The translations under genes and the position numbers were made by a program. From the IMG/VR virus record IMGVR_UViG_3300017917_003143, positions 186,001 through 250,000 of that record: a stretch of 64,000 nt of DNA, one strand, 5' to 3'. Below the pieces are notes generated by a model, which did not search any database, was not told the DNA's origin, and saw only the letters and a program-made list of their open reading frames with translations. Positions 11,085 through 19,514 of this stretch are shown piece after piece (the first letter of the stretch is position 1; the number at the start of each line of letters is the position of its first letter).

Positions 11085-11159
11085 GGTCCTATCGATTAGG
11101 GGTAAAGTCATCGCCCTGTCACGGCGAAGTCACGGGTTCGAATCCCGTTGGGACCGCCA
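11085..11159 (+). tRNA. tRNA-Asp (GTC)
   Basis: Cloverleaf; TCGCC-CTGTCAC-GGCGA; CCA. Confidence 0.95.
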
Positions 11160-11165
11160 GTTTAT

Positions 11166-11242
11166 TCCTCAGTAGCACAGTTGGTAGTTGCGCTTGACTG
11201 TTAATCAAGATGTCGGTGGTTCGAGCCCACCCTGGGGAGCCA
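11166..11242 (+). tRNA. tRNA-Asn (GTT)
   Basis: Cloverleaf; CTTGA-CTGTTAA-TCAAG; CCA. Confidence 0.95.
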
Positions 11243-11244
11243 AG

Positions 11245-12051
11245 TTAGTAAGGCCATTTATAGATATCTTGTATCTTTAATGGAACAGAGTTGACTTTTG
11301 ATTTGTTATACAGTCGGATGATCACTCGTTTGTTTGTTTCACCAAAAGAGTAAAGAGAGTCCGACAGCTCTTGTCTGACAAAATCCGGCACATTTTTTTC
11401 TGAGATTATATCTTCATAGGTAGGCCAATCATCGCCTTGTACATTGATATATTCCTCATAGGTTATGTGTCGCAACTCTTTGGGTGATGGATTTCCGTGA
11501 CATTGTACATAATCGCAAGCGAATCCAAATATCTGGGCGACTTGTAATATCCATGATATGTTTGGTGTACCAATAGGAACTATGTTGCAATTTCCAAATG
11601 CACCGTTGGTATCTACGTGTACACTTTCAAAACTCCAGACCATTTCTGGATTAAGTGATTCTGGTCCGAACACTGTTTCCATCAAACAGTGACTGACATT
11701 GGGATTTAAAATTTGAGAGAAAAATTGGAAATGATTGTGCAAGTGATATAACAATCCTAACACTATCACAGTGTCGCTTTGTTTGACCAATGGTGATATC
11801 AGATCTTTGTCGGTCACATCGCCTACAACAAAATCAATGTTAGAGTGAGTGATTCTTTGTTTGGCTTGCTCTATCAGATGAGATCTGATGTCGACTGCAA
11901 AAACATGTTTGGCACCAAGATTTAAGATATGAGAAGTAGATAGTCCGTTGTTGCAGGCTAAATCTAAGACATTTTTATTTTTGATTATATCAAGATTTTG
12001 TCGTAGATATGTCGACATTGGAATGTTTGAAACAGATTTGATGTCTTGCAT
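11245..12051 (-). CDS. class I SAM-dependent methyltransferase (CmoB-like), antisense inside the tRNA array
   Basis: VLDLACNNG motif I; VIVLGLLYHL; start reassigned to MQDIK at 12051. Confidence 0.8.
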   Translation of the reverse strand: MQDIKSVSNIPMSTYLRQNLDIIKNKNVLDLACNNGLSTSHILNLGAKHVFAVDIRSHLIEQAKQRITHSNIDFVVGDVTDKDLISPLVKQSDTVIVLGLLYHLHNHFQFFSQILNPNVSHCLMETVFGPESLNPEMVWSFESVHVDTNGAFGNCNIVPIGTPNISWILQVAQIFGFACDYVQCHGNPSPKELRHITYEEYINVQGDDWPTYEDIISEKNVPDFVRQELSDSLYSFGETNKRVIIRLYNKSKVNSVPLKIQDIYKWPY

Positions 12052-12093
12052 GATAATAATTATCCAACAACTGATTACTTGAACCAATTTTAT

Positions 12094-12184
12094 GCCCCTG
12101 TAGTTTAATGGTAAAACAGCGGATTTATATCCCGTAGCAACAGATAATTGGTTAATGCAGGTTCGACTCCTGCCGGGGGTACCA
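12094..12184 (+). tRNA. tRNA-Ile (TAT) with 21-nt variable region
   Basis: GCGGA-TTTATAT-CCCGT; GCAGG-TTCGACT-CCTGC; CCA. Confidence 0.75.
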
Positions 12185-12190
12185 GTTAAT

Positions 12191-12267
12191 GTATCGGTAG
12201 TTCCAACTGGCAGAACGACAGTCTCCAAAACTGTATGATGGGGGTTCGAATCCCTCCCGGTACGCCA
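12191..12267 (+). tRNA. tRNA-Trp (CCA)
   Basis: ACAGT-CTCCAAA-ACTGT; CCA. Confidence 0.95.
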
Positions 12268-12273
12268 AATAAT

Positions 12274-12351
12274 GCAACGGTGGCAGAGTGGCCCAATGCA
12301 ACGGATTGCAAATCCGTAAAACCGCTGGTTCAAATCCAGCCCGTTGCTCCA
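12274..12351 (+). tRNA. tRNA-Cys (GCA)
   Basis: ACGGA-TTGCAAA-TCCGT; U73; CCA. Confidence 0.95.
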
Positions 12352-12427
12352 TTTACGTGATGCTTGAACCTGGCCCTGAAAGCCAGTCTGCACTTTTGAC
12401 CTATGCAGGGCCTCTCACAACATTTTA

Positions 12428-12517
12428 GGAAGTGTGGCAGAGTCCGGTTTATTGCACCTGTCTTGAAAACAGACGATCAGAAATGGTCCGTGAGTTCGAA
12501 TCTCACCGCTTCCGCCA
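12428..12517 (+). tRNA. tRNA-Ser (TGA)
   Basis: CTTGAAA loop; long variable arm; G73. Confidence 0.95.
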
Positions 12518-12528
12518 AATAGAAATAC

Positions 12529-12618
12529 GGAGAGGTCCCATAATGGTATTGGAGCGGATTGCTAATCCGTCGACTTGCGAAAGCAGGTTTCTGGGTTCAA
12601 GTCCCAGTCTCTCCGCCA
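12529..12618 (+). tRNA. tRNA-Ser (GCT)
   Basis: TTGCTAA loop; long variable arm; G73. Confidence 0.95.
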
Positions 12619-12619
12619 T

Positions 12620-12697
12620 ACGCCTGTAGCTCAGTTGGACCAGAGTATCACGCTACGAACGTGAGGGCCGGAGGTTCGAATCCTTCCAGGCGTGCCA
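12620..12697 (+). tRNA. tRNA-Arg (ACG)
   Basis: TCACG-CTACGAA-CGTGA; CCA. Confidence 0.95.
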
Positions 12698-12706
12698 GAA
12701 TACGAT

Positions 12707-12783
12707 GGTGTAGTTAGTGTCAGCGGTCAGCACTACGGATTGTGATCCCGTCAGCATGGGTTCGAATCCCATACTACACCCCA
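12707..12783 (+). tRNA. tRNA-His (GTG)
   Basis: G-1:C73; TTGTGAT loop; CCA. Confidence 0.93.
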
Positions 12784-12791
12784 TACAATTT

Positions 12792-12868
12792 GCCCCGGTG
12801 ACGGAATTGGTATACGTGTTGGTCTTAGAAACCAAATTTTAGGAGTTCGAGTCTCCTCTGGGGCACCA
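12792..12868 (+). tRNA. tRNA-Leu (TAG), short variable loop
   Basis: TTGGT-CTTAGAA-ACCAA; 5-nt variable loop; A73. Confidence 0.9.
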
Positions 12869-12874
12869 AACATC

Positions 12875-12958
12875 GCGACTGTGGTGGAATCGGTAGACAC
12901 AGCAGACTTAAAATCTGCCGCTTATAGCGTGCCGGTTCGATTCCGGCCAGTCGCACCA
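12875..12958 (+). tRNA. tRNA-Leu (TAA)
   Basis: GCAGA-CTTAAAA-TCTGC; long variable arm. Confidence 0.95.
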
Positions 12959-12974
12959 TGATATAAGTATTGAT

Positions 12975-13694
12975 ATGAAAAATATTGTCATTGCTGGAGA
13001 TTCTTGGGGTTGCGGCGAATGGGCTGAACAACATGATTCAAGCGACGATCAATATCTGTTACACAAAGGTGTGGCACAATATCTTTCTGACGACGGTCAT
13101 TTTGTTATAAATGTGGCCAAAGGCGGAATCTCTAATTTCCAAGCTGTAGATCGACTTGATAGACTATTGGATCAAATCTGCGATACATCGAAAATAGATT
13201 TTATTCTATTCTTCCAGTCTGAGTGGAGCAGAGACATAGATTTTAGCCAGTTAGATAAGTCATATACAGAATTAAAATCAACTCTAATGTCGAGTGTGTA
13301 TTATACACTCAGCCAGTTGGCCCAGAAGTATCAAGTCAAGATACACCTAATAGGCGGCATGGCTGATACTGTAAAATTAGAGGATTGGAACACAGAATAT
13401 CCTGGTACAGAGATACTGTGCCAAAGCATGTTTAATTTTGTCAAACACAATGACAAAGATATCAATGCTCCTGTGCATGATTGTTTTTTATTATTAGATC
13501 CTGCAAAGATACAACAACTCAAGAGCAAATCTAACATGGACTTAGAAACCATAGTCGATGACATCGACCTGGCAAATACTCGATTAAAAAATCTCCGAGA
13601 CTGCACCGAGCTGTTTTGGCCCGACGGAGTACATGCCAATCGAGTAGCTCATAAAAAATTACATGAGTTAATCAACGAACAATTGATGCAGTAA
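12975..13694 (+). CDS. SGNH/GDSL hydrolase-like protein
   Basis: IAGDSW; DGVHAN C-terminal motif. Confidence 0.75.
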   Translation: MKNIVIAGDSWGCGEWAEQHDSSDDQYLLHKGVAQYLSDDGHFVINVAKGGISNFQAVDRLDRLLDQICDTSKIDFILFFQSEWSRDIDFSQLDKSYTELKSTLMSSVYYTLSQLAQKYQVKIHLIGGMADTVKLEDWNTEYPGTEILCQSMFNFVKHNDKDINAPVHDCFLLLDPAKIQQLKSKSNMDLETIVDDIDLANTRLKNLRDCTELFWPDGVHANRVAHKKLHELINEQLMQ

Positions 13695-13768
13695 TCATAC
13701 AATAAGTTTCGCGAGTACATCAATGCGTCTCCTTGACAGACACGCCGCTTGAGTCTCGCACCCAATAA

Positions 13769-13847
13769 CCGAGTGTAGGAAAGTCTGGTTCAATCCGCCT
13801 GCTTTGGGAGCAGGAGACCGAAGGTTCGAATCCTTCCACTCGGACCA
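13769..13847 (+). tRNA. tRNA-Pro (TGG)
   Basis: CCTGC-TTTGGGA-GCAGG; CCA. Confidence 0.95.
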
Positions 13848-13853
13848 TTTAAT

Positions 13854-13932
13854 GCCCCCTTGGACAAATTGGTAAAGTCGTCTCTCTCAAAAGGAGAAGT
13901 TGTTCTCAGTTCGAATCTGAGAGGGGGTACCA
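13854..13932 (+). tRNA. tRNA-Leu (CAA), short variable region
   Basis: TCTCT-CTCAAAA-GGAGA; 7-nt variable region; A73. Confidence 0.85.
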
Positions 13933-13935
13933 TAT

Positions 13936-14010
13936 GCAGGTATAATTCAGTGGTAGAATGTCTCGTTGCCAACGAGAATGTCGTCGGTTCGAACCCGACT
14001 ACCTGCTCCA
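13936..14010 (+). tRNA. tRNA-Gly (GCC)
   Basis: TCTCG-TTGCCAA-CGAGA; U73. Confidence 0.95.
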
Positions 14011-14015
14011 CACAT

Positions 14016-14092
14016 GCATCCTTAACTCAGCTGGCCAGAGTGCCCTCCTTACAAGTGGGAAGTCGGGAGTTCGAATCTCTCAGGATGCACCA
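14016..14092 (+). tRNA. tRNA-Val (TAC)
   Basis: CTTACAA loop; CCA. Confidence 0.93.
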
Positions 14093-14095
14093 AGT

Positions 14096-14314
14096 TTTGT
14101 TGTAGTGTTAGCAAGAGAAAGACACGCTGGCTAGGTTTCTTCGAAGGACCGAATCAGTAGAAGGTGGCGGGTTCGATGCCCGACGGATCGGAAGATCCGG
14201 GTACATGGTGGCGTACTATCTGGTCCGGTATCCCAAGTAACGTACCGAGTCCTGCCCGGGCTAGTTAATCCAGGTGAATGGTGTCAATAACGATGGTGAC
14301 ACGTCTGCAACAAA
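14096..14314 (+). ncRNA. unassigned ~220-nt structured RNA between tRNA-Val and tRNA-Phe
   Basis: Ends pair (TTTGTTGTAG/CTGCAACAAA); T-loop hairpin CGGG-TTCGATG-CCCG; CGGATC-GGAA-GATCCG; GTGTC/GACAC. Confidence 0.65.
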
Positions 14315-14322
14315 TTCAATAT

Positions 14323-14398
14323 GCCGCTTTAGCTGATGTGGTCATAGCAACGGACTGAAAATCCGTGGAACCCTGTTCGATCCGGGGAGGCGGCACCA
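14323..14398 (+). tRNA. tRNA-Phe (GAA)
   Basis: ACGGA-CTGAAAA-TCCGT; CCA. Confidence 0.95.
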
Positions 14399-14402
14399 AC
14401 AA

Positions 14403-14476
14403 GCCCTATTCGTATAATGGTATTACGTCGGTTTTGTAATCCGAATACGGGAGTTCGATTCTCTCATGGGGCACCA
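14403..14476 (+). tRNA. tRNA-Thr (TGT)
   Basis: TTTGTAA loop; CCA. Confidence 0.93.
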
Positions 14477-14512
14477 TGTTTACCGTTTTGTTGTTTTTGG
14501 ACAACAAGGCAG

Positions 14513-14572
14513 TTGACGATGAAAACACTTTAGCCTACAATAGAGGCTTAGTTAGTTAAATGTTCTTTAAAA
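14513..14572 (+). promoter_or_regulatory. sigma70 promoter followed by a Nus boxA-like element
   Basis: TTGACG-17-TACAAT; TGTTCTTTAAAA at 14561-72. Confidence 0.7.
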
Positions 14573-14590
14573 ATTTAAATGTATAGTCCT

Positions 14591-14699
14591 TATACACATG
14601 AGCACTAAAGGCTAAAGAGCTCGGCCCATGTTGCGGAAACAGCTTCGCCTTTTGGCGTGGTTGGTAGGTTCAATTCCTACAAAGTGTTCAGCTGTATAA
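14591..14699 (+). ncRNA. tRNA-like RNA without CCA or a canonical anticodon loop
   Basis: Acceptor-like GAGCACT/AGTGTTC; T arm GTAGG-TTCAATT-CCTAC; CGCC-TTTT-GGCG arm; outer TATAC/GTATA helix. Confidence 0.55.
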
Positions 14700-15585
14700 G
14701 GATTCGGGGGAGTCTAATCTCCTGTAGGCGGCTTGCCGTCTACGAAGGATAAGTGCCGTGAGGTGCCCAAAGATGCGATGCCTACACAACATCGCCAGCA
14801 ATGGTCCATTTAGACAAGCCTGCTCACACCCGTGAGGGTGCGTTCACTGAGAAGACCGGTGGATGTAACAGCAAAGCTGATGTAGTGGAAAGAACGCTGA
14901 TCGACAGGCCGCAAGGAACCTGGGTCGGTGGAAAGTAACAGGTGGTGCTGACTTCACTACAAAACCAATCAGTCAACTGGTATGAGAAAGGGTAGTGTGT
15001 TGGTCCGAAGGGTCGCTCCTAAGGGCTGGCATGCAGTATTAGTGGTCCGTGGGTTGCGTCGTGAGACGTGGCACATAGGTCGCAAAATACGACTGAGTAA
15101 TCCGCGAGATGAAAGGTACGTGGTGTGTTGTATTCTGCATTCCAAAAGAGTGTGGAGCAACTGAGGCAGCACATCATTGTAGGTTCGATATAGCCTAATG
15201 GTAGGGCGATTTCCTTCTAAGAAATAGACTGTTGGTTCGACTCCAACTATCAAACAAAAACGCAAAGACTGCCTCGGTCACGTGTGAAAAGCATCTAACG
15301 CTTCAGCCGTAAGGTAATGAAGTCAGACGTAGCTCGCAAGGTGAAATCTGTTTATGCTGGAAGTTTCGTAAGGTGTTAGCGCACCTGAATGGCTCGCAAG
15401 GTCAACGGAGAAGAAAGCGTAGAGTAGCATGTGATGTCAAGACTACTGCCTGTCTTTAAACGGCGATGCTGGTAGCAGACCGAGATACCGCAAGGGTTTC
15501 GGTGGATGTCAGGAGAAGGTACGCTCGCAAGGTGTACTATAATGCCTGAGGTGTTACTGGGCAAGGTGTAATCTCAGCCTTCCAC
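14700..15585 (+). ncRNA. giant structured ncRNA, probably GOLLD
   Basis: About 890 nt without a credible ORF; many GNRA-capped hairpins (CGCAAG, CGTGAG, CGTAAG); sits in a phage tRNA array; ends at a terminator. Family assigned from size, context and recalled 3' motif, not from a covariance search. Confidence 0.7.
15184..15256 (+). tRNA. tRNA-Arg (TCT)-like cloverleaf embedded in the giant ncRNA
   Basis: TTCGATA/TATCAAA acceptor with one mismatch; ATTTC-CTTCTAA-GAAAT; GTTGG-TTCGACT-CCAAC; no CCA. Confidence 0.7.
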
Positions 15586-15592
15586 AATCAAC

Positions 15593-15615
15593 AAAACCGC
15601 TCCGGCGGTTTTTTC
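15593..15615 (+). terminator. intrinsic terminator after the giant ncRNA
   Basis: AAAACCGC-TCCG-GCGGTTTT followed by T-run. Confidence 0.85.
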
Positions 15616-15624
15616 TTTTTCTGT

Positions 15625-15698
15625 TCGGGTGTAGTGTAATGGTAACACCACAGACTTTGACTCTGTTATTCTAGGTTCGAGCCCTAGCACCCGTGCCA
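15625..15698 (+). tRNA. tRNA-Gln (TTG)
   Basis: ACAGA-CTTTGAC-TCTGT; CCA. Confidence 0.93.
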
Positions 15699-15700
15699 TT

Positions 15701-15774
15701 GCTCCTATAGGTAAATGGTATACCGACGCCATGGTAAGGCGTAATTCTAAGTTCGATCCTTGGTGGGAGCACCA
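15701..15774 (+). tRNA. tRNA-Thr (GGT)
   Basis: ACGCC-ATGGTAA-GGCGT; CCA. Confidence 0.9.
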
Positions 15775-15826
15775 GGATTTTTAAAGGAGAGACTGTCATG
15801 TCTAGTGACAAGAGTGACAAACTGTT

Positions 15827-15901
15827 GGGGGTGTGGTGAAATGGTATCACAGCAGACTTTTAATCTGCCAATTTCGGGTTCGAGTCCCGGCGCCCCTACC
15901 A
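15827..15901 (+). tRNA. tRNA-Lys (TTT)
   Basis: GCAGA-CTTTTAA-TCTGC; CCA. Confidence 0.95.
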
Positions 15902-15959
15902 TATAAAAACACATTACTAAGAGTCCATATTCAGAGCGTGGCATAGTGTGTTTCTATAT
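15901..15959 (+). repeat. spacer hairpin element, second copy of 10289-10350
   Basis: ATATAAAAACACATT...TAGTGTGTTTCTATAT. Confidence 0.7.
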
Positions 15960-16035
15960 GGTAACGTAGCATAGCGGCTAATGCACCACCTTCATACGGT
16001 GTTTATCGTGGGTTCGAGTCCCACCGTTACTACCA
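15960..16035 (+). tRNA. tRNA-Met (CAT, elongator)
   Basis: TTCATAC loop; G1:U72 paired. Confidence 0.85.
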
Positions 16036-16039
16036 ATTT

Positions 16040-16115
16040 CCGCCCGTAGTCTAATGGATAAGGCAACGGTCTTCTACACCGTCAGATGTGGGTTCGACTC
16101 CTGCCGGGCGGGCCA
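16040..16115 (+). tRNA. tRNA-Arg (TCT)
   Basis: ACGGT-CTTCTAC-ACCGT; CCA. Confidence 0.93.
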
Positions 16116-16121
16116 AAAATA

Positions 16122-16196
16122 CGGCCCTTAGTTCAATGGATAGAATGCGATGCTTCGAACTTCGAGATGTGGGTTCGATTCCTGCAGGGCCGGCCA
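16122..16196 (+). tRNA. tRNA-Arg (TCG)
   Basis: CTTCGAA loop; CCA. Confidence 0.9.
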
Positions 16197-16200
16197 AATC

Positions 16201-16274
16201 GCTCGGATAGTTAAATGGTATAACGGTCGCTTGATAAGCGATTATTCCAAGTTCAATTCTTGGTCTGAGCACCA
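16201..16274 (+). tRNA. tRNA-Ile (GAT)
   Basis: GTCGC-TTGATAA-GCGAT; CCA. Confidence 0.93.
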
Positions 16275-16370
16275 AAAATATTTGCCAAACTTGTCAACGA
16301 GCGTGTGGTCTACGGCGTTATATGTATAGCACATCACAAATTGTGCTGTTTCTAAACAAAGGAGAACTTT

Positions 16371-16568
16371 ATGAAACTCGTAGCTACACTAATCGCAAGT
16401 TTGTTCGCTGTATCCGCTTTCGCACAGGCACCTGCTGCCAAGAAAGAAGAAGCCAAGCCAGCCGCGGCTGCTCCAGCACCTGCTGCCAAGCCAGCAGAGA
16501 AAAAAGCTGAGCCTGCCAAAAGCGACGCTAAAAAAGACGACAAAAAAGCCGACGCTCCTAAGAAGTAA
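16371..16568 (+). CDS. secreted Ala/Lys/Pro-rich small protein
   Basis: AAGGAG SD; signal peptide ending AFA; PAAKK/PAEKK repeats. Confidence 0.85.
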   Translation: MKLVATLIASLFAVSAFAQAPAAKKEEAKPAAAAPAPAAKPAEKKAEPAKSDAKKDDKKADAPKK

Positions 16569-16755
16569 TCCTGCTCATGTCATCGTACTCACGTTGGATG
16601 ACAGTGAGTACGAGTTTGAAGGAGATGATTACCTACATGTAGGATATCGAAGACCTGAACTGATCCATGTTTACTTTGACGAAGATGTTGAACTAAGCGA
16701 TCATGTAAAGTTTAGGTTATGGCTTGCCAGACAACTGGCGTTAAAGAAGTACAAG

Positions 16756-16785
16756 GAAACCTGGGGATGACCCGGGTTTCTTTTT
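16756..16785 (+). terminator. intrinsic terminator
   Basis: GAAACCTGGG-GATGA-CCCGGGTTTC-TTTTT. Confidence 0.7.
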
Positions 16786-16859
16786 GGGGGATTAGTTAAA
16801 TGGGATAACATCGGCTTTGCAAGCCGAGATTGAGAGTTCGATTCTCTCATCCTCCACCA
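16786..16859 (+). tRNA. tRNA-Ala (TGC)
   Basis: G3:U70; TTTGCAA loop; CCA. Confidence 0.95.
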
Positions 16860-16864
16860 AACAC

Positions 16865-16893
16865 TTGACAGTCACTAAATATTTTAGTAAAAT
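16865..16893 (+). promoter_or_regulatory. sigma70-type promoter
   Basis: TTGACA-17-TAAAAT. Confidence 0.75.
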
Positions 16894-16914
16894 AAAGTAT
16901 CCAAGGAGACTGCG

Positions 16915-17076
16915 ATGCAACAAGAAAAAACACCAGTGCCACAATATTTTTTCTCTCCCGGAGAATGGGATAGATTAGGATGCGGACCATTGCCGCCTGA
17001 GCGCAATCGTGATTTACAGAAAGCCATGGAACGCAGTGTTGAACACAAAGAAGACACAGGCAAAGGATATAACTGA
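16915..17076 (+). CDS. small hypothetical protein (53 aa)
   Basis: AAGGAG SD; MQQEKTPVPQYFFSPGEWDRLGCG. Confidence 0.7.
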   Translation: MQQEKTPVPQYFFSPGEWDRLGCGPLPPERNRDLQKAMERSVEHKEDTGKGYN

Positions 17077-17304
17077 TGGGATGGATAGCAGTATTGATTA
17101 TTGGTTGTTTGGTCGTTTATTTCATGGTCAAAAGCAAAGATCATGAAAACGATGAGTAAATAAGATTACTATGCGAGAGTATGCACCCAGCGGCGCTCCT
17201 GGATCTGCTGGCAATGTTGATGTGGTGAGAGGCCACAGGTCGCGCGAAGACCGTACATGTCTCGATAGTTTCGTGAACTGCCTACAACGCCCAAGACAGT
17301 AGGA

Positions 17305-17673
17305 GTTAGCCGAAAGGCCATGCGGGCATTATTGTTGTAATCCCTTCAAAACGAAGGCATGTTGGACGTGGGTTCGATTCCCACCAGGTCCACCAAAAGA
17401 GGATTAAAGTATGGATGACGATTTGGCAAGATTTGCGATGGGTATGGTAGCTGTGATCGTCATTGGAGCCATAGTCCTTTTCTGATGGGCCTGACCAGGT
17501 TTCGACAGCGTGAGATAGTGGAGACGGCAACACGGCAAAGCAGAAGCCGTAGGATTGGGGATTCCCGGTCGTAGAAGCAAAAAAAAGTAAACGCAAATGA
17601 TGAGGTTTACGCTTTAGCCGCTTGATCGGTTAAATGAGGATTCCCAGGTGTTCCTTATCACCCAAACACCTGG
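17305..17673 (+). ncRNA. ssrA: circularly permuted (two-piece) tmRNA
   Basis: T arm and acceptor 3' strand CAGGTCC-A-CCA end at 17395, upstream of the 5' end GGGCCTGACCAGGTTTCGAC at 17487 (G3:U70); tag frame 17593-17625 ANDEVYALAA-TGA; 5' boundary approximate. Confidence 0.92.
17411..17485 (+). CDS. 24-aa hydrophobic micro-protein inside the tmRNA intervening segment
   Basis: GAGGA SD; MDDDLARFAMGMVAVIVIGAIVLF-TGA. Confidence 0.6.
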   Translation: MDDDLARFAMGMVAVIVIGAIVLF

Positions 17674-17722
17674 TTGACTTCTTTTGTTTTTTCTCGTATA
17701 ATTACACATTCGCTCTTTAATA
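17674..17722 (+). promoter_or_regulatory. sigma70 promoter plus boxA-like element
   Basis: TTGACT-17-TATAAT; CGCTCTTTAATA at 17711-22. Confidence 0.8.
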
Positions 17723-17736
17723 ATTGACAGCATTAT

Positions 17737-17811
17737 GCTCGGTTCGTCTATCGGTCAGGACACCGCCCTTTCACGGCGGGAAGAGGGGTTCGATTCCCCT
17801 ACCGAGTACCA
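17737..17811 (+). tRNA. tRNA-Glu (TTC)
   Basis: CCGCC-CTTTCAC-GGCGG; CCA. Confidence 0.95.
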
Positions 17812-17942
17812 TAAGAAAACTCTTTGAAGTGTGGCTACACTGGAGAACAGTAAACTTCCGATGAAACCGGTCGAAGGAAGAACCTGCCAGGAAGATACGG
17901 AGCTATACAGTCGGGTTCGATTCCTGCAAAGAGTTTTCTTAT
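17811..17942 (+). ncRNA. Y RNA (YrlA)-like tRNA mimic
   Basis: 15-bp terminal helix ATAAGAAAACTCTTT/AAAGAGTTTTCTTAT; T loop GGG-TTCGATT-CCT; CTTCC/GGAAG stem carrying GTCGAAGG. Confidence 0.5.
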
Positions 17943-17944
17943 GG

Positions 17945-18405
17945 TAAGTGATGTGAGAGAAAGTGGTTAGTCACCACCCCGATTGCCAGGGGATGACACC
18001 ACCCTCGACCGCTGTGGGCCGCAAGGACCATGATCGTTTGACTAACGATCGAACACATGTTGGAGGGGAGATGGTAGCCAGGATACGCAATGAGCTCGAC
18101 GTGCTCGCGATCGTTGTAGGTTACGCACTCTTAAACACGCAGGCAGTATCGCTATCCATAATCTACATAGACTCAACAGTGATGCATTATTATATTCCTG
18201 GTGCTACTATAAGCTGGGGCCACTCACTGCTATGTTTAGCGACGCTAGATCGATCCGAGTATCCGGTAGTTTTCTAGCCTCTCGCAACCCCAATCGGTCT
18301 GGGCTAAACTCTGTGCTCTGTATGATCGGCCTCGACAGCTGGTCCTCTGCATCGCAGGTCACTGAGCATCAACACAGACTCCGCATAATCGTAAGCGGAA
18401 CTAAC
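17945..18405 (+). ncRNA. unassigned large (~460 nt) structured RNA
   Basis: Several local hairpins and three long-range complementarities (see findings); lies between RNA genes; no credible ORF. Confidence 0.6.
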
Positions 18406-18408
18406 AAT

Positions 18409-18483
18409 CGCGGAGTATATCAGTGGCAGATGGCGAGTCTCATAAGCTCGAGGTCAGTGGTTCGAATCCACTCTCCGCAACCA
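18409..18483 (+). tRNA. tRNA-fMet (CAT)-like
   Basis: C1:A72 mismatch; CTCATAA loop; anticodon stem lacks the usual three G-C pairs. Confidence 0.8.
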
Positions 18484-18488
18484 AAAAT

Positions 18489-18562
18489 GCAGGGTTCGTA
18501 TAGTGGTAATACCTCAGCCTTCCAAGCTGATGCGGAGAGTTCGATTCTCTTACCCTGCTCCA
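18489..18562 (+). tRNA. tRNA-Gly (TCC)
   Basis: TCAGC-CTTCCAA-GCTGA; U73. Confidence 0.95.
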
Positions 18563-18564
18563 GA

Positions 18565-18800
18565 ACGTTCCGTTGTCAACGGATAGTGCGACCCGCACGA
18601 TGAGAAGTGAGCTGACACTCACGGGTGGTCCCAGTCTAACCCTAACTGGCGCTGGCAATGCGTTAATCCCAGAGACGGCAAGCGGATGCCTCGGTGGCCT
18701 TAGACTATCCTGCTGAGGGGGCGGAAACCGATGGGCGGATGTTGTAATAACCAACCAGGATGCCACAGGCGCTTAAAATGACCGCGGTCTCTGGCGAAGC
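18565..18800 (+). ncRNA. unassigned structured RNA upstream of rpoZ
   Basis: TCCGTT/AACGGA, GTGAG/CTCAC, CCAGT/ACTGG hairpins; CCAGAGAC 18669 pairs with GTCTCTGG 18787. Confidence 0.5.
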
Positions 18801-18820
18801 TTTTATAAAGGAAAAATAGC

Positions 18821-19048
18821 ATGGCAAGAATCACATCAGAAAAAGCAGTACAAGCAGTAGGTAACCGTTACGATCTAATCTTGGTCGCTAGCCGACGTGC
18901 CCGTGAGTTGTCTAACGGTCATGCTCCTCATATCACAACCAATGATACCACAGTGGTCAAGGCCATTAGAGAAATTGAGCAAGGCCATATCGGTCGAGAT
19001 TATCTTTACAAGAGCCAAGACATCGAGCGAAAAAAGACAAAATCCTAG
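18821..19048 (+). CDS. rpoZ: RNA polymerase omega subunit
   Basis: MARITSEKAVQAVGNRYDLILVASRRAREL...VKAIREIEQG. Confidence 0.92.
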   Translation: MARITSEKAVQAVGNRYDLILVASRRARELSNGHAPHITTNDTTVVKAIREIEQGHIGRDYLYKSQDIERKKTKS

Positions 19049-19079
19049 ATTTTTGCCAAAAGAGATATATACACATATT

Positions 19080-19514
19080 ATGCTGTCATTCATTCACGAA
19101 CTAACTGATCCACTGTTAGATTATCTCAAGGACGATCCTGTGCGCCCGGATATCCCTCGCGAGTTCCGTGTAAGTGGAAAAAGGTTTGTCAGTGCCTTGG
19201 TAGAAGATCAGCCCAAGGCCATGGTTTGTGTAAGTTTGCATGACTTTGTTCCTGCCACAGTAGAAGATCTTGCACGTGATCCGCAAGAACCCAACACAGC
19301 TATATTCTACACCATTTGGAGCTATGTTCCTGGAGCCGCTGGCGAACTCCTGTTTGCCACAGTAGACGAAATCCGTCGACAGTTTCCCACTGTCAAACGC
19401 TTTGTGACACTGAGCCCAAAAACTGAAATGGCCCGACGCTTCCATATCAAAAATGGTGCTCAAGTTTTCAGAGAAAACGACAGCACTGTAAACTACGAAT
19501 ATATACTTGCATGA
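19080..19514 (+). CDS. GNAT-fold protein resembling the malonyl-CoA decarboxylase C-terminal domain
   Basis: AIFYTIWS...FVTLSP motifs. Confidence 0.5.
   Translation: MLSFIHELTDPLLDYLKDDPVRPDIPREFRVSGKRFVSALVEDQPKAMVCVSLHDFVPATVEDLARDPQEPNTAIFYTIWSYVPGAAGELLFATVDEIRRQFPTVKRFVTLSPKTEMARRFHIKNGAQVFRENDSTVNYEYILA

What the first reader, a model, noticed from the sequence alone, without database searches (positions are those of the whole stretch)
17945..18405. Second large ornate RNA (~460 nt) with no family I can assign
Seen: local hairpins (GTGGT/ACCAC, CCCC/GGGG, GATCGTT/AACGATC, a CGCAAG tetraloop) and long-range complements: CCGATTG 17979 with CAATCGG 18291, GACCGCTG 18007 with CAGCTGGTC 18336, GGATAC 18081 with GTATCC 18259. 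It is flanked by RNA genes that would release it on processing. The first pairing uses a hairpin loop, implying a pseudoknot. Inference: an undescribed large ncRNA.
Basis: partly seen in the sequence, partly recalled or inferred. Interest (0 to 1): 0.7.

Follow-up and report, generated by a model that had tools for sequence, protein, structure and literature searches.

The report
New large phage tRNA-array RNA
Between two tRNA genes of an uncultivated 344-kb freshwater phage lies a roughly 470-nt non-coding RNA that matches no described RNA family. Its folded shape is kept by compensating mutations in related phages, which makes it a new relative in kind, not in sequence, of the large phage RNAs GOLLD and ROOL, and its function is unknown.

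Summary
Window 17941-18408 (+) is a single-copy, ORF-free stretch of about 468 nt in the tRNA array of a 343,632-bp IMG/VR jumbo phage.

- **Family:** no Rfam 15 family matches it, even at E<=10. The same window holds a true GOLLD that scores 220.9 bits.
- **Homologues:** eight full-length homologues, one cut copy and one deletion remnant exist. All come from related freshwater phage contigs and always sit as tRNA-Glu / stem-insert / RNA / tRNA-Met / tRNA-Gly.
- **Structure:** on a 9-sequence alignment, 83 proposed pairs are 97% canonical, against 32-44% when the partners are slid. 21 pairs carry compensatory changes, against 1-4 in the slid controls.
the local hairpins are confirmed. The three long-range pairings are at chance level and are not conserved.
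- **Layout:** a variable 5' domain (57% identity between subgroups) and a conserved 3' domain (84%).
- **Expression:** a consensus sigma-70 promoter precedes tRNA-Glu in all homologues. The 3' end abuts an initiator-like tRNA-Met. Pieces of the RNA appear in eight metatranscriptomes.

The function is unknown. The best guess is a stable, trans-acting RNA of the GOLLD/ROOL kind, released by tRNA-processing enzymes.

The parts
17674..17702 (+). Sigma-70-type promoter (TTGACT, 17-nt spacer, TATAAT) for the unit tRNA-Glu / stem-insert / large RNA / tRNA-Met / tRNA-Gly
   Evidence: It matches 11 of 12 consensus positions. A site matching 11-12 of 12 lies 32-34 nt before tRNA-Glu in all 8 homologous loci, although the spacer sequence differs. 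No terminator-like site occurs in 16800-19300.
17737..17811 (+). tRNA-Glu (UUC), the upstream neighbour. Its discriminator base and CCA end (17808-17811) lie inside the stem below.
   Evidence: Found by ARAGORN and Rfam. It is the upstream neighbour in every homologue that extends that far.
17808..17945 (+). Perfect 19-bp stem (17808-17826 with 17927-17945) enclosing a hypervariable insert of about 100 nt. In the window the insert carries a T-arm-like hairpin (17912-17926, loop UUCGAUU). Inferred to be the 5' processing module. Its last 5 nt are also the first nt of helix P1 of the large RNA.
   Evidence: RNAfold of eight loci shows a stem of 17-20 bp in each. The stem sequence differs completely between the window, L114, L003, L005 and the L006 type. 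The T-stem covaries between the window (CGGG/CCUG) and L114 (UUGG/CCAA). Cleavage by RNase III or RNase P/Z is inference.
17941..18159 (+). 5' domain of the large RNA. Its sequence varies but its architecture is conserved.
- P1: 17941-52 with 18148-59
- H1: 17963-67 / 17973-77
- H2: 17977-80 / 17989-92
- Pseudoknot PK1: 17982-87 with 18142-47
- H3 multibranch: 18002-05 / 18064-67, holding the GNRA hairpin H4 (18016-29) and H5 (18032-38 / 18044-50)
- Loop-loop contact KL1: 17970-73 with 18039-42
- H6: 18074-79 / 18119-24, enclosing the variable hairpin H7
   Evidence: Identity between subgroups is 56.5%. P1, H3-H5 and H6/H7 were recovered independently in each subgroup and in each sequence.
18160..18408 (+). 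3' domain of the large RNA, the conserved core.
- Pa: 18165-70 / 18230-35
- Pb: 18177-82 / 18224-29
- Pc hairpin: 18196-201 / 18214-19
- Pd hairpin: 18239-18285, with an invariant internal loop containing GAUCGAUC
- Pe multi-helix arm: 18297-18379
- Pf hairpin: 18380-18399
- A 9-nt tail that ends at the tRNA-Met 5' end
   Evidence: Identity between subgroups is 84.1%. Pd has three compensatory pairs and Pe2 has one, while Pe4 varies on one side only. Pc covaries in the per-sequence folds. Pa, Pb, Pe1 and Pf never vary, so they are only predicted. 44 G-U cells in the pair table (my count from that table) fit only the + strand.
18409..18483 (+). tRNA-Met (CAU) with a C1xA72 mismatch, which is initiator-like. 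RNase P cleavage at its 5' end would create the 3' end of the large RNA.
   Evidence: Found. The mismatch at the first acceptor pair is marked in the alignment. The tRNA starts 0-1 nt after the RNA in the window and in L003, L006, L007, L002, L114, L115, L118, L119 and L120. RNase P cleavage is inferred from established tRNA biology.
18489..18562 (+). tRNA-Gly (UCC), the last tRNA of the unit
   Evidence: Found. It is conserved in most homologues.

Best explanation
Window 17941-18408 (+) encodes a stable, highly structured, non-coding RNA of about 468 nt that belongs to no described family.

Proposed steps, each marked shown or inferred:
1. Host RNA polymerase transcribes it from a consensus sigma-70 promoter, as part of a tRNA operon: tRNA-Glu, stem-insert, the RNA, initiator-like tRNA-Met, tRNA-Gly. 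The promoter and the gene order are shown. Use of the promoter by the host enzyme is inferred.
2. tRNA-maturation machinery cuts the RNA out. RNase P cleavage at the 5' end of tRNA-Met makes its 3' end. Its 5' end is freed by cleavage in or beside the 19-bp duplex that ties the CCA trailer of tRNA-Glu to the first nucleotides of the RNA. That would be RNase III type, or RNase P/Z through the tRNA-like insert. All of this step is inferred.
3. Once freed, the 5' strand AUGGUAAGUGAU re-pairs with 18148-18159 (P1). This closes a 5' domain that is locked by a pseudoknot and a loop-loop contact. The pairings are shown by covariation. Their order in time is inferred.
4. The near-invariant 3' domain of about 250 nt is the functional core. 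By analogy with GOLLD and ROOL, it most likely acts in trans during infection as an RNA-only architecture, possibly multimeric, that deals with tRNA or the translation apparatus. This is speculative.
For: - **Identity:** no Rfam family matches at E<=10. The RNA is single copy in the window and in the genome record.
- **Non-coding:**
- **Conservation and synteny:** it was found in 8 distinct full-length copies from independent metagenome assemblies.
- **Structure:** 97.3% of 707 cells are paired, against 32-44% when slid. 21 pairs have changes on both sides, against 1-4 when slid. No shuffle out of 500 reached the observed values. Architecture was recovered per subgroup and per sequence.
- **Two-domain conservation:** 56.5% against 84.1% identity between subgroups.
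- **Promoter:** conserved at 11-12 of 12 positions.
- **3' end:** it abuts the tRNA-Met.
- **Processing stem:** 17-20 bp long and fully covarying.
- **RNA evidence:** contigs of this RNA or close variants occur in 8 metatranscriptomes. X16 covers 18335-18481 at 100% identity. X17 covers 17968-18150 and 18305-18419. X19 covers 18036-18142. X24 has four pieces at depth 7-39, against 2.7-2.8 for the two pieces on flanking coding DNA. X25, X26 and X27 cover 18264-18413. No run has depth on 18705-19038, which holds the end of the leader and nearly all of the rpoZ-like gene.
- **Independence from GOLLD:** G001 is 91% complete and has the RNA but no GOLLD.
Against: - The MFE z-score is only -0.58.
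- Only 9 sequences in two subgroups are available, so there are few independent compensatory events, and the structure was derived from the same sequences it was tested on.
- About half of the 3' domain helices never vary and are therefore untested.
- Logan contigs have no strand and give only a crude depth, and DNA carry-over in RNA libraries cannot be excluded (tool caveats).
- Neither RNA end has been mapped.
- One close relative, L005, has lost the central ~385 nt and the tRNA-Met. The RNA is therefore dispensable for at least that phage.
- Nothing here bears directly on function or on multimerisation.
Confidence: 0.65

Rival explanations
1. It is a cis-acting spacer. Under this reading the folded RNA exists only to organise maturation of the flanking tRNAs, especially the initiator-like tRNA-Met, in the way rRNA-operon spacers do. 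It would be degraded afterwards and would have no trans function.
For: It always sits between tRNA-Glu and tRNA-Met. Its 5' end is tied to the tRNA-Glu CCA end by a long duplex. In L005 the RNA core and the tRNA-Met are both missing, while the two terminal hairpins remain.
Against: A spacer does not need about 250 nt held at 84-92% identity while the adjacent 5' domain drifts to 57%. Most other tRNAs in the same array are separated by only 2-10 nt. In metatranscriptome X24, pieces of the RNA are several-fold deeper than the flanking coding pieces, which fits a stable product.
Confidence: 0.15
2. It is a mobile or self-splicing element, such as an intron-like ribozyme or another insertion, that entered a short ancestral spacer. 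L005 would then show the empty site.
For: L005 keeps the first ~45 nt and the last ~33 nt but lacks the ~385 nt between them. The neighbouring stem-insert module is hypervariable, and parts of it recur at other positions in relatives.
Against: No group I or group II intron family, or any other ribozyme family, matches at E<=10. The deleted segment begins with G and ends with A. From my own knowledge, a group I intron ends in G and a group II intron has GUGYG...AY ends, so it has neither signature. There is no ORF. There is one copy per genome, always at the same site. P1 and PK1 bridge the supposed insertion boundary.
Confidence: 0.05
3. It is a strongly diverged member of a known large RNA family that current covariance models miss. 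Candidates are RNase P RNA, whose presence would make sense beside 33 phage tRNAs, or GOLLD or ROOL.
For: There is a loose resemblance of GUGAGAGAAAGUGG and ACAGACUCCGCAUAAUCG to the RNase P CR-I and CR-V/P4 strands. This rests on my recollection of the E. coli M1 RNA sequence and is a lead, not a test. Like GOLLD, the RNA has a variable 5' half and a conserved 3' half (GOLLD organisation from bioRxiv 10.1101/2024.12.08.627333).
Against: cmscan with permissive filters lists no RNase P, GOLLD, ROOL, OLE, HEARO or raiA match at E<=10 for either subgroup. The genuine GOLLD in the same window scores 220.9 bits. The would-be P4 strands are each occupied by local hairpins: H1, which shows covariation, and Pf, which is predicted but hardly varies. 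The two strands do not covary with each other. The 5' and 3' ends do not pair as P1 of RNase P would.
Confidence: 0.05
4. It is not an RNA gene at all. Under this reading it is a protein-coding stretch or a DNA-level element that is conserved by chance among close relatives.
For: The window has open frames of 104 and 123 aa here. All the homologues come from one phage clade.
Against: The frames are not conserved, variable columns show no codon periodicity, and the indels would shift any frame. The 123-aa frame runs through two tRNA genes. No Pfam family matches. Compensatory changes and 44 G-U cells specific to the + strand are present. Pieces occur in metatranscriptomes.
Confidence: 0.03

Closest known systems
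GOLLD RNA (Rfam RF02032)
   Same: Both are large structured ncRNAs of phages found in or beside tRNA islands. GOLLD env-38 lies next to a Met-tRNA. GOLLD also has a variable 5' region and a universally conserved 3' region, has pseudoknots and kissing loops, and has no known function (bioRxiv 10.1101/2024.12.08.627333, read). A true GOLLD lies 2.4 kb upstream in the same array.
   Different: There is no sequence or model similarity: no hit at E<=10, against 220.9 bits for the real GOLLD. This RNA is about 470 nt, while many GOLLD members exceed 800 nt. It occurs in a genome without GOLLD. No embedded tRNA was found. Multimer formation is untested.
ROOL RNA (Rfam RF03087)
   Same: ROOL is a phage or prophage RNA that is often near tRNA islands. 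It is several hundred nt long, has multiple pseudoknots, no known protein partner and no known function.
   Different: No model match was found. ROOL is known from a wide variety of bacterial phages and prophages, whereas this RNA was found only in one clade of uncultivated freshwater jumbo phages.
Stable 'species 1 / species 2' RNAs of the phage T4 tRNA cluster (from my own knowledge, not checked here)
   Same: They are non-tRNA stable RNAs encoded inside a phage tRNA gene cluster, are co-transcribed with the tRNAs, are matured by host tRNA-processing enzymes, and still have no known function.
   Different: By my recollection the T4 RNAs are only about 120-140 nt and are much simpler. No homology was tested or is expected.
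RNase III processing stems of rRNA operons and T7 early transcripts (from my own knowledge)
   Same: A long, nearly perfect duplex forms between sequences flanking a segment of a polycistronic stable-RNA precursor. The pairing is kept while the sequence drifts.
   Different: Here the duplex joins a tRNA 3' CCA end to the 5' end of a large ncRNA and encloses a small variable insert rather than the mature RNA itself. Cleavage has not been shown.

Membership tests
GOLLD (RF02032) | Score at or above the Rfam gathering threshold (150 bits) against the GOLLD covariance model | tested here: not met
   No GOLLD match in 17780-18850 even at E<=10, nor in the L006 copy. The positive control at 15120-15580 in the same window scores 220.9 bits.
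GOLLD (RF02032) | Conserved 3' region joined to a poorly conserved 5' region | tested here: met
   Identity between subgroups is 84.1% for the 3' domain and 56.5% for the 5' domain. This is a resemblance in organisation only, not evidence of homology.
ROOL (RF03087) | Match to the ROOL covariance model | tested here: not met
   No match at E<=10.
RNase P RNA (Rfam bacterial A/B, archaeal and nuclear models) | Match to an RNase P covariance model, and a P4 helix between CR-I and CR-V with paired 5' and 3' ends (P1) | tested here: not met
   No RNase P match at E<=10. The candidate strands sit in local hairpins H1 and Pf. The ends do not pair with each other; the 5' end pairs with 18148-59.
RNase P RNA | Catalytic cleavage of pre-tRNA 5' leaders | not testable with these tools
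   This needs an in vitro assay.
Group I / group II self-splicing introns | Match to the intron covariance models, canonical splice-site nucleotides, and location inside a host gene | tested here: not met
   No match at E<=10. The segment missing from L005 starts with G and ends with A and lies in a spacer, not inside a gene.
tmRNA | tRNA-like domain plus a tag-peptide reading frame | tested here: not met
   The phage's tmRNA is a separate gene at 17269-17716. ARAGORN and Rfam find nothing in 17941-18408.
Kind: large, ornate, phage-borne ncRNAs of tRNA islands (GOLLD/ROOL type) | More than 400 nt, no ORF, and many helices supported by covariation including tertiary pairings | tested here: met
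   About 468 nt. 18 helices and 83 pairs were tested, and 21 pairs are compensatory. They include one pseudoknot and one loop-loop contact, and further helices appear. There is no conserved ORF.
Kind: large, ornate, phage-borne ncRNAs of tRNA islands (GOLLD/ROOL type) | Encoded by phages next to tRNA genes and expressed | tested here: met
   It lies inside a 33-gene tRNA/tmRNA array of a 344-kb virus record. Contigs occur in 8 metatranscriptomes. Expression evidence is indirect because contigs carry no strand.
Kind: large, ornate, phage-borne ncRNAs of tRNA islands (GOLLD/ROOL type) | Self-assembly into RNA-only multimers or nanocages | not testable with these tools
   The only hints are invariant palindromic loop segments: GAUCGAUC at 18248-18255 and AUGCAU at 18182-18187. 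About 1.8 palindromes of 8 nt and about 7 of 6 nt are expected by chance in 470 nt (my arithmetic).

The most novel reading that the evidence does not exclude
This would be a third, independently evolved class of large phage RNA that works as an RNA-only machine. One version is a self-assembling multimer or cage like GOLLD and ROOL. Another is a new ribozyme or a binder of tRNA CCA ends, whose invariant 250-nt 3' domain acts on tRNAs or ribosomes early in infection. In the precursor, the RNA's 5' AUGGU pairs with the ACCAU 3' end of tRNA-Glu.
Probability: 0.15. Interest if true: 0.85.

Novelty: new member of a known kind. Interest (0 to 1): 0.62.

Why it matters
Natural structured RNAs longer than about 400 nt and without a known function are rare. 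GOLLD, ROOL, OLE, HEARO and raiA are the main examples. The first cryo-EM structures showed that GOLLD and ROOL form unexpected RNA-only nanocages.

A further, unrelated family in the same genomic niche, with a very strongly conserved 3' core, gives an independent case for asking what phages use such RNAs for. It occurs both with and without GOLLD.

It also comes with a clear, testable maturation scheme: a consensus promoter, a covarying 19-bp stem tied to a tRNA CCA end, and an RNase P site at an initiator-like tRNA. Several other unassigned structured spacers lie in the same arrays. This suggests that jumbo-phage tRNA islands are a largely unexplored reservoir of ncRNAs.

Tried and rejected
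**Searches for a known family or for more homologues**
- Rfam at gathering thresholds and at E<=10 on the window copy and on the L006 copy gave only chance-level hits: SNORD23 at E 0.66 and PhotoRC-I on the opposite strand.
- INPHARED phages, blastn in 'distant' mode: no match. tblastn with a 1078-aa window protein to find an isolated relative: no match.
- The pattern for the 3' hairpin in viral contigs gave 58 hits. Nearly all lie in an unrelated capsid-like gene (MAYVSTDSASLGGT...), and only six come from the known relatives.
- Two further motif scans of viral contigs returned only the same contigs.
- Two scans of genome contigs gave 0 and 10 hits. The 10 are chance matches: the best nhmmer E-value is 0.1.
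- Profile nhmmer and a 12-motif co-occurrence scan over all ~130 fetched loci found no distant homologue.

**Other ideas tested**
- Paralogue or GOLLD-like repeat within the window: none found.
- Thermodynamic stability: not significant.
- An alternative partner for the H2 loop, the 5' segment GUGAU at 17948-52, was rejected in favour of 18142-47. The alternative mismatches in L119 and L120, while PK1 pairs in all 8 sequences.
- The RNase P P4 idea and the intron idea were rejected, as set out under the rival explanations.
- The spacer at the matching position in more distant relatives (L008-L012, tRNA-Met to tRNA-Gly) is unrelated in sequence.

**Literature**
- Searches found no description of this RNA.
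- The IMG/VR catalogue of candidate structured RNAs (PMC10690425) could not be checked, because its supplementary files are not held.

Full report
**Setting.** The window is bases 186001-250000 of a 343,632-bp IMG/VR virus record estimated 99% complete, so it is a jumbo phage. Positions 11085-18562 (+) form an array of 30 of the window's 32 tRNA genes and a tmRNA gene (17269-17716, tag ANDEVYALAA, best fitted by the betaproteobacterial model), with a genuine GOLLD RNA at 15120-15580 (220.9 bits). The finding lies between tRNA-Glu(UUC) at 17737-17811 and tRNA-Met(CAU) at 18409-18483.

**Is it a known RNA or a gene?** Rfam 15 (4227 families) gives nothing at gathering thresholds. With permissive filters at E<=10 it gives only chance-level hits, and none to GOLLD, ROOL, RNase P, introns, OLE, HEARO or raiA. 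This holds for the window copy and for a divergent homologue. The open frames of 104 and 123 aa in the window match no Pfam family. They are not conserved in the nearest relatives, variable columns are spread evenly over the three codon phases (58, 66 and 59), and the indels would shift any frame. The stretch is single copy in the window and in the genome record.

**Homologues.**
- Loci were fetched through the adjacent rpoZ-like gene (18821-19048, PF01192) and searched with nhmmer. This found copies in L003/L004 and L006, cut copies in L007 and L002, and a remnant in L005.
- One metagenome scan with the invariant loop motif GATCGATCCGAGTATNCGGTAG added L114/L116, L115, L118, L119 and L120.
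- Further scans of viral contigs and of one genome for each of 185,579 prokaryote species found no other true homologue.
- The family therefore has 8 distinct full-length members in two subgroups: A (window, L114, L115) and B (L006, L003, L118-L120). The subgroups are about 70% identical overall.
- All members come from freshwater-type samples, and all share the order tRNA-Glu, stem-insert, RNA, tRNA-Met, then tRNA-Gly(UCC) where it is present.
- The L003 genome is 91% complete and has this RNA but no GOLLD. The same search does find GOLLD in the window's own genome.

**Structure.**
- MFE folding alone is unremarkable, with a z-score of -0.58. The evidence for structure is comparative.
- On the 9-sequence alignment A3 I tested a structure of 18 helices and 83 pairs. 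It was assembled from RNAalifold runs, a compensatory-pair scan and inspection.
- 97.3% of 707 cells are standard pairs, against 32-44% when the 3' partners are slid by 1-3 columns. 21 pairs show changes on both sides, against 1-4 in the slid controls. None of 500 column shuffles reaches the observed values.
- The well-supported elements are these:
  - the inner part of P1 (3 of 5 pairs compensatory);
  - H2, CCCC/GGGG;
  - pseudoknot PK1, between the H2 loop (17982-87) and 18142-47 (4 of 6 pairs compensatory, 100% paired);
  - H5 (4 compensatory pairs);
  - loop-loop contact KL1, GUCA x UGAC in subgroup A and GCCA x UGGC in subgroup B;
  - hairpin Pd (3 compensatory pairs, in haplotypes shared across both subgroups);
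  - Pe2, CUGUG/CGCAG.
- Folding each sequence separately recovers several elements in both subgroups: the full 10-12-bp P1 (17941-52 with 18148-59), the H3 multibranch with H4 and H5, the nested H6/H7 arm, and hairpin Pc with clear covariation (CCUGG/CCAGG, CCCAGG/CCUGGG, CCUGGG/CCCAGG).
- 44 G-U cells in the pair table (my count from that table) would be A-C mismatches on the other strand. This fixes the RNA to the + strand.
- Helices Pa, Pb, Pe1 and Pf never vary and remain predictions only.
- The 5' domain (17941-18159) is 56.5% identical between subgroups and the 3' domain (18160-18408) is 84.1%. Organisation therefore resembles what is reported for GOLLD.

The four local hairpins are real and conserved. 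The three long-range complements are at chance level, with 8 complementary 7-mers observed against 6.5 in shuffles. They are not maintained in relatives. The idea that the first hairpin loop takes part in a pseudoknot was right, but the partner is different.

**Expression and maturation.**
- A TTGACT-17-TATAAT promoter lies at 17674-17702. A site matching 11-12 of 12 consensus positions occupies the same place, 32-34 nt before tRNA-Glu, in all eight loci, although the spacer sequence differs. No terminator-like site occurs before the rpoZ-like gene.
- Directly after tRNA-Glu, a perfect 19-bp duplex (17808-26 with 17927-45) pairs the tRNA's discriminator base and CCA end with the nucleotides that begin the large RNA. 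It encloses an insert of about 100 nt.
- In relatives the stem has an entirely different sequence but stays 17-20 bp long, and the insert is replaced wholesale. This is the signature of selection for a long double-stranded RNA. I infer it is a processing site, of RNase III type. In subgroup A the route could instead be RNase P/Z, through the T-arm-like hairpin at 17912-26, whose stem covaries between the window and L114.
- The last five nucleotides of that stem are also the first of P1. The two pairings therefore exclude each other, and P1 probably forms after cleavage (inference).
- At the other end, the RNA stops 0-1 nt before a tRNA-Met whose C1xA72 mismatch marks it as initiator-like. RNase P would create the 3' end (inference from standard tRNA biology).
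- Nineteen metatranscriptome runs hold words of the RNA, and eight were inspected.
  - X16 has a 100%-identical contig over 18335-18481.
  - X17, X19, X25, X26 and X27 have contigs of close variants over 17968-18150, 18036-18142 and 18264-18419.
  - X24 has four pieces at depth 7-39, against 2.7-2.8 for the two pieces on the flanking coding region.
  - No run has any depth on 18705-19038, which holds the end of the leader and nearly all of the rpoZ-like gene.
- This fits a stable, relatively abundant RNA. Logan contigs carry no strand, their depth is crude, and DNA carry-over cannot be excluded.

**The L005 variant.** A close relative (rpoZ-like protein 83% identical) keeps the first ~45 nt (through H1 and the 5' side of H2) and the last ~33 nt (hairpin Pf). 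It lacks the ~385 nt between them and also lacks tRNA-Met. The missing segment has no intron-like ends, and P1 and PK1 span its boundaries. I therefore read it as a deletion, which shows that the RNA is dispensable for at least that phage.

**Function.**
- Nothing here tests function directly.
- The shown facts are these: the RNA sits in an early-type sigma-70 tRNA operon, it lies next to an initiator-like tRNA, its 3' core is held nearly invariant, it has elaborate tertiary pairing, and it occurs independently of GOLLD.
- From these I commit to a trans-acting, stable, structured RNA of the GOLLD/ROOL kind. I give about 0.9 that it is a genuine structured ncRNA, about 0.6 for the maturation scheme, and about 0.15 for an RNA-only assembly or a tRNA- or ribosome-directed activity.
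- The invariant palindromic loop segments GAUCGAUC (18248-55) and AUGCAU (18182-87) could mediate self-association, but palindromes of this size are expected by chance.
- The rival readings are a pure processing spacer, a mobile or intron-like element, a diverged known family, or no RNA gene at all. Each is weighed in the rival explanations.

**Novelty.** I found no description of this RNA in Rfam 15 or in the searchable literature. The IMG/VR catalogue of about 8,500 candidate structured RNAs (PMC10690425) could contain it, but its supplementary files are not held. I rate the RNA a new family within a known kind: large, ornate phage RNAs of tRNA islands.

Noticed in passing
window 17808-17945; also L003 5028-5142, L005 5495-5590, L006 4871-5038, L114 4082-4233, L032 285-668: A 17-20-bp perfect stem runs from the CCA end of tRNA-Glu to the start of the large RNA and encloses a hypervariable insert. 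Stem and insert sequences differ completely between relatives, but the duplex is kept. The window and L114 inserts carry a T-arm-like hairpin (GGTTCGATTCC). L032 has two such modules in tandem and shares the L006-type insert without having the large RNA.
   Followed up: partly
window 18563-18820: A conserved leader of about 250 nt lies between tRNA-Gly and the rpoZ-like gene. It folds into several hairpins and a long-range helix, and 13 of 44 predicted pairs are compensatory across 6 loci. No Rfam match was found. It may be a cis-regulatory element or a further ncRNA.
   Followed up: partly
window 18821-19048: A 75-aa phage gene matches the RNA polymerase omega/Rpb6 family (PF01192, E 2.7e-14). 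52 related viral loci carry it, usually at the end of a tRNA array.
   Followed up: partly
window 2959-3033: A tRNA with a CUA anticodon, which ARAGORN labels tRNA-Pyl, is an amber-suppressor-type tRNA. It could point to TAG recoding in part of this phage. I did not test this, and no alternative genetic code was used.
   Followed up: no
window 18409-18483: The tRNA-Met directly after the large RNA has a C1xA72 mismatch at the top of the acceptor stem. That is the hallmark of bacterial initiator tRNA. The window also has two other tRNA-Met genes (3658, 15960).
   Followed up: partly
window 16275-16785 and 16860-17268: Two further spacers of about 400-500 nt (tRNA-Ile to tRNA-Ala, and tRNA-Ala to tmRNA) are conserved among the close relatives. 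They have no ORF of 70 aa or more on the + strand and no Rfam match. A metatranscriptome contig at depth 19 covers 16430-16571. They may be more unassigned ncRNAs.
   Followed up: partly
window 14477-15624: The GOLLD match (15120-15580) contains an embedded tRNA-Arg(UCU) at 15183-15256. An unassigned stretch of about 640 nt precedes it and probably holds the part of GOLLD that the Rfam model does not cover. A similar spacer occurs beside the GOLLD of L034.
   Followed up: no
L005 5575-5662: This is a natural deletion variant. Only the first ~45 nt and the last ~33 nt of the large RNA remain, and tRNA-Met is absent, in a phage whose rpoZ-like protein is 83% identical.
   Followed up: yes
L006 ~5640-5740, L120 ~11150-11250, L008 ~1590-1700: A module of about 100 nt (GTAGCTACA[A/G]TGGAACACCGAAATAC...) recurs in different inter-tRNA spacers of different phages. 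It may explain the 29-member spacer cluster. It could be a small mobile or processing module.
   Followed up: no
L008 1190-1706, L009 1969-2422, L012 1900-2415: In more distant relatives the tRNA-Met to tRNA-Gly(UCC) spacer is 454-517 nt and AT-rich, has no open frame longer than 62 aa, and shows some compensatory changes in hairpins. It is unrelated in sequence to the RNA studied here and is another candidate ncRNA.
   Followed up: partly
L054-L111 (most of these loci): The 3' hairpin motif of the RNA matches by chance the start of a widespread phage gene (MAYVSTDSASLGGTAGGAGLVQK..., probably a major capsid protein) in about 45 IMG/VR contigs. This is a warning for motif-based searches.
   Followed up: yes
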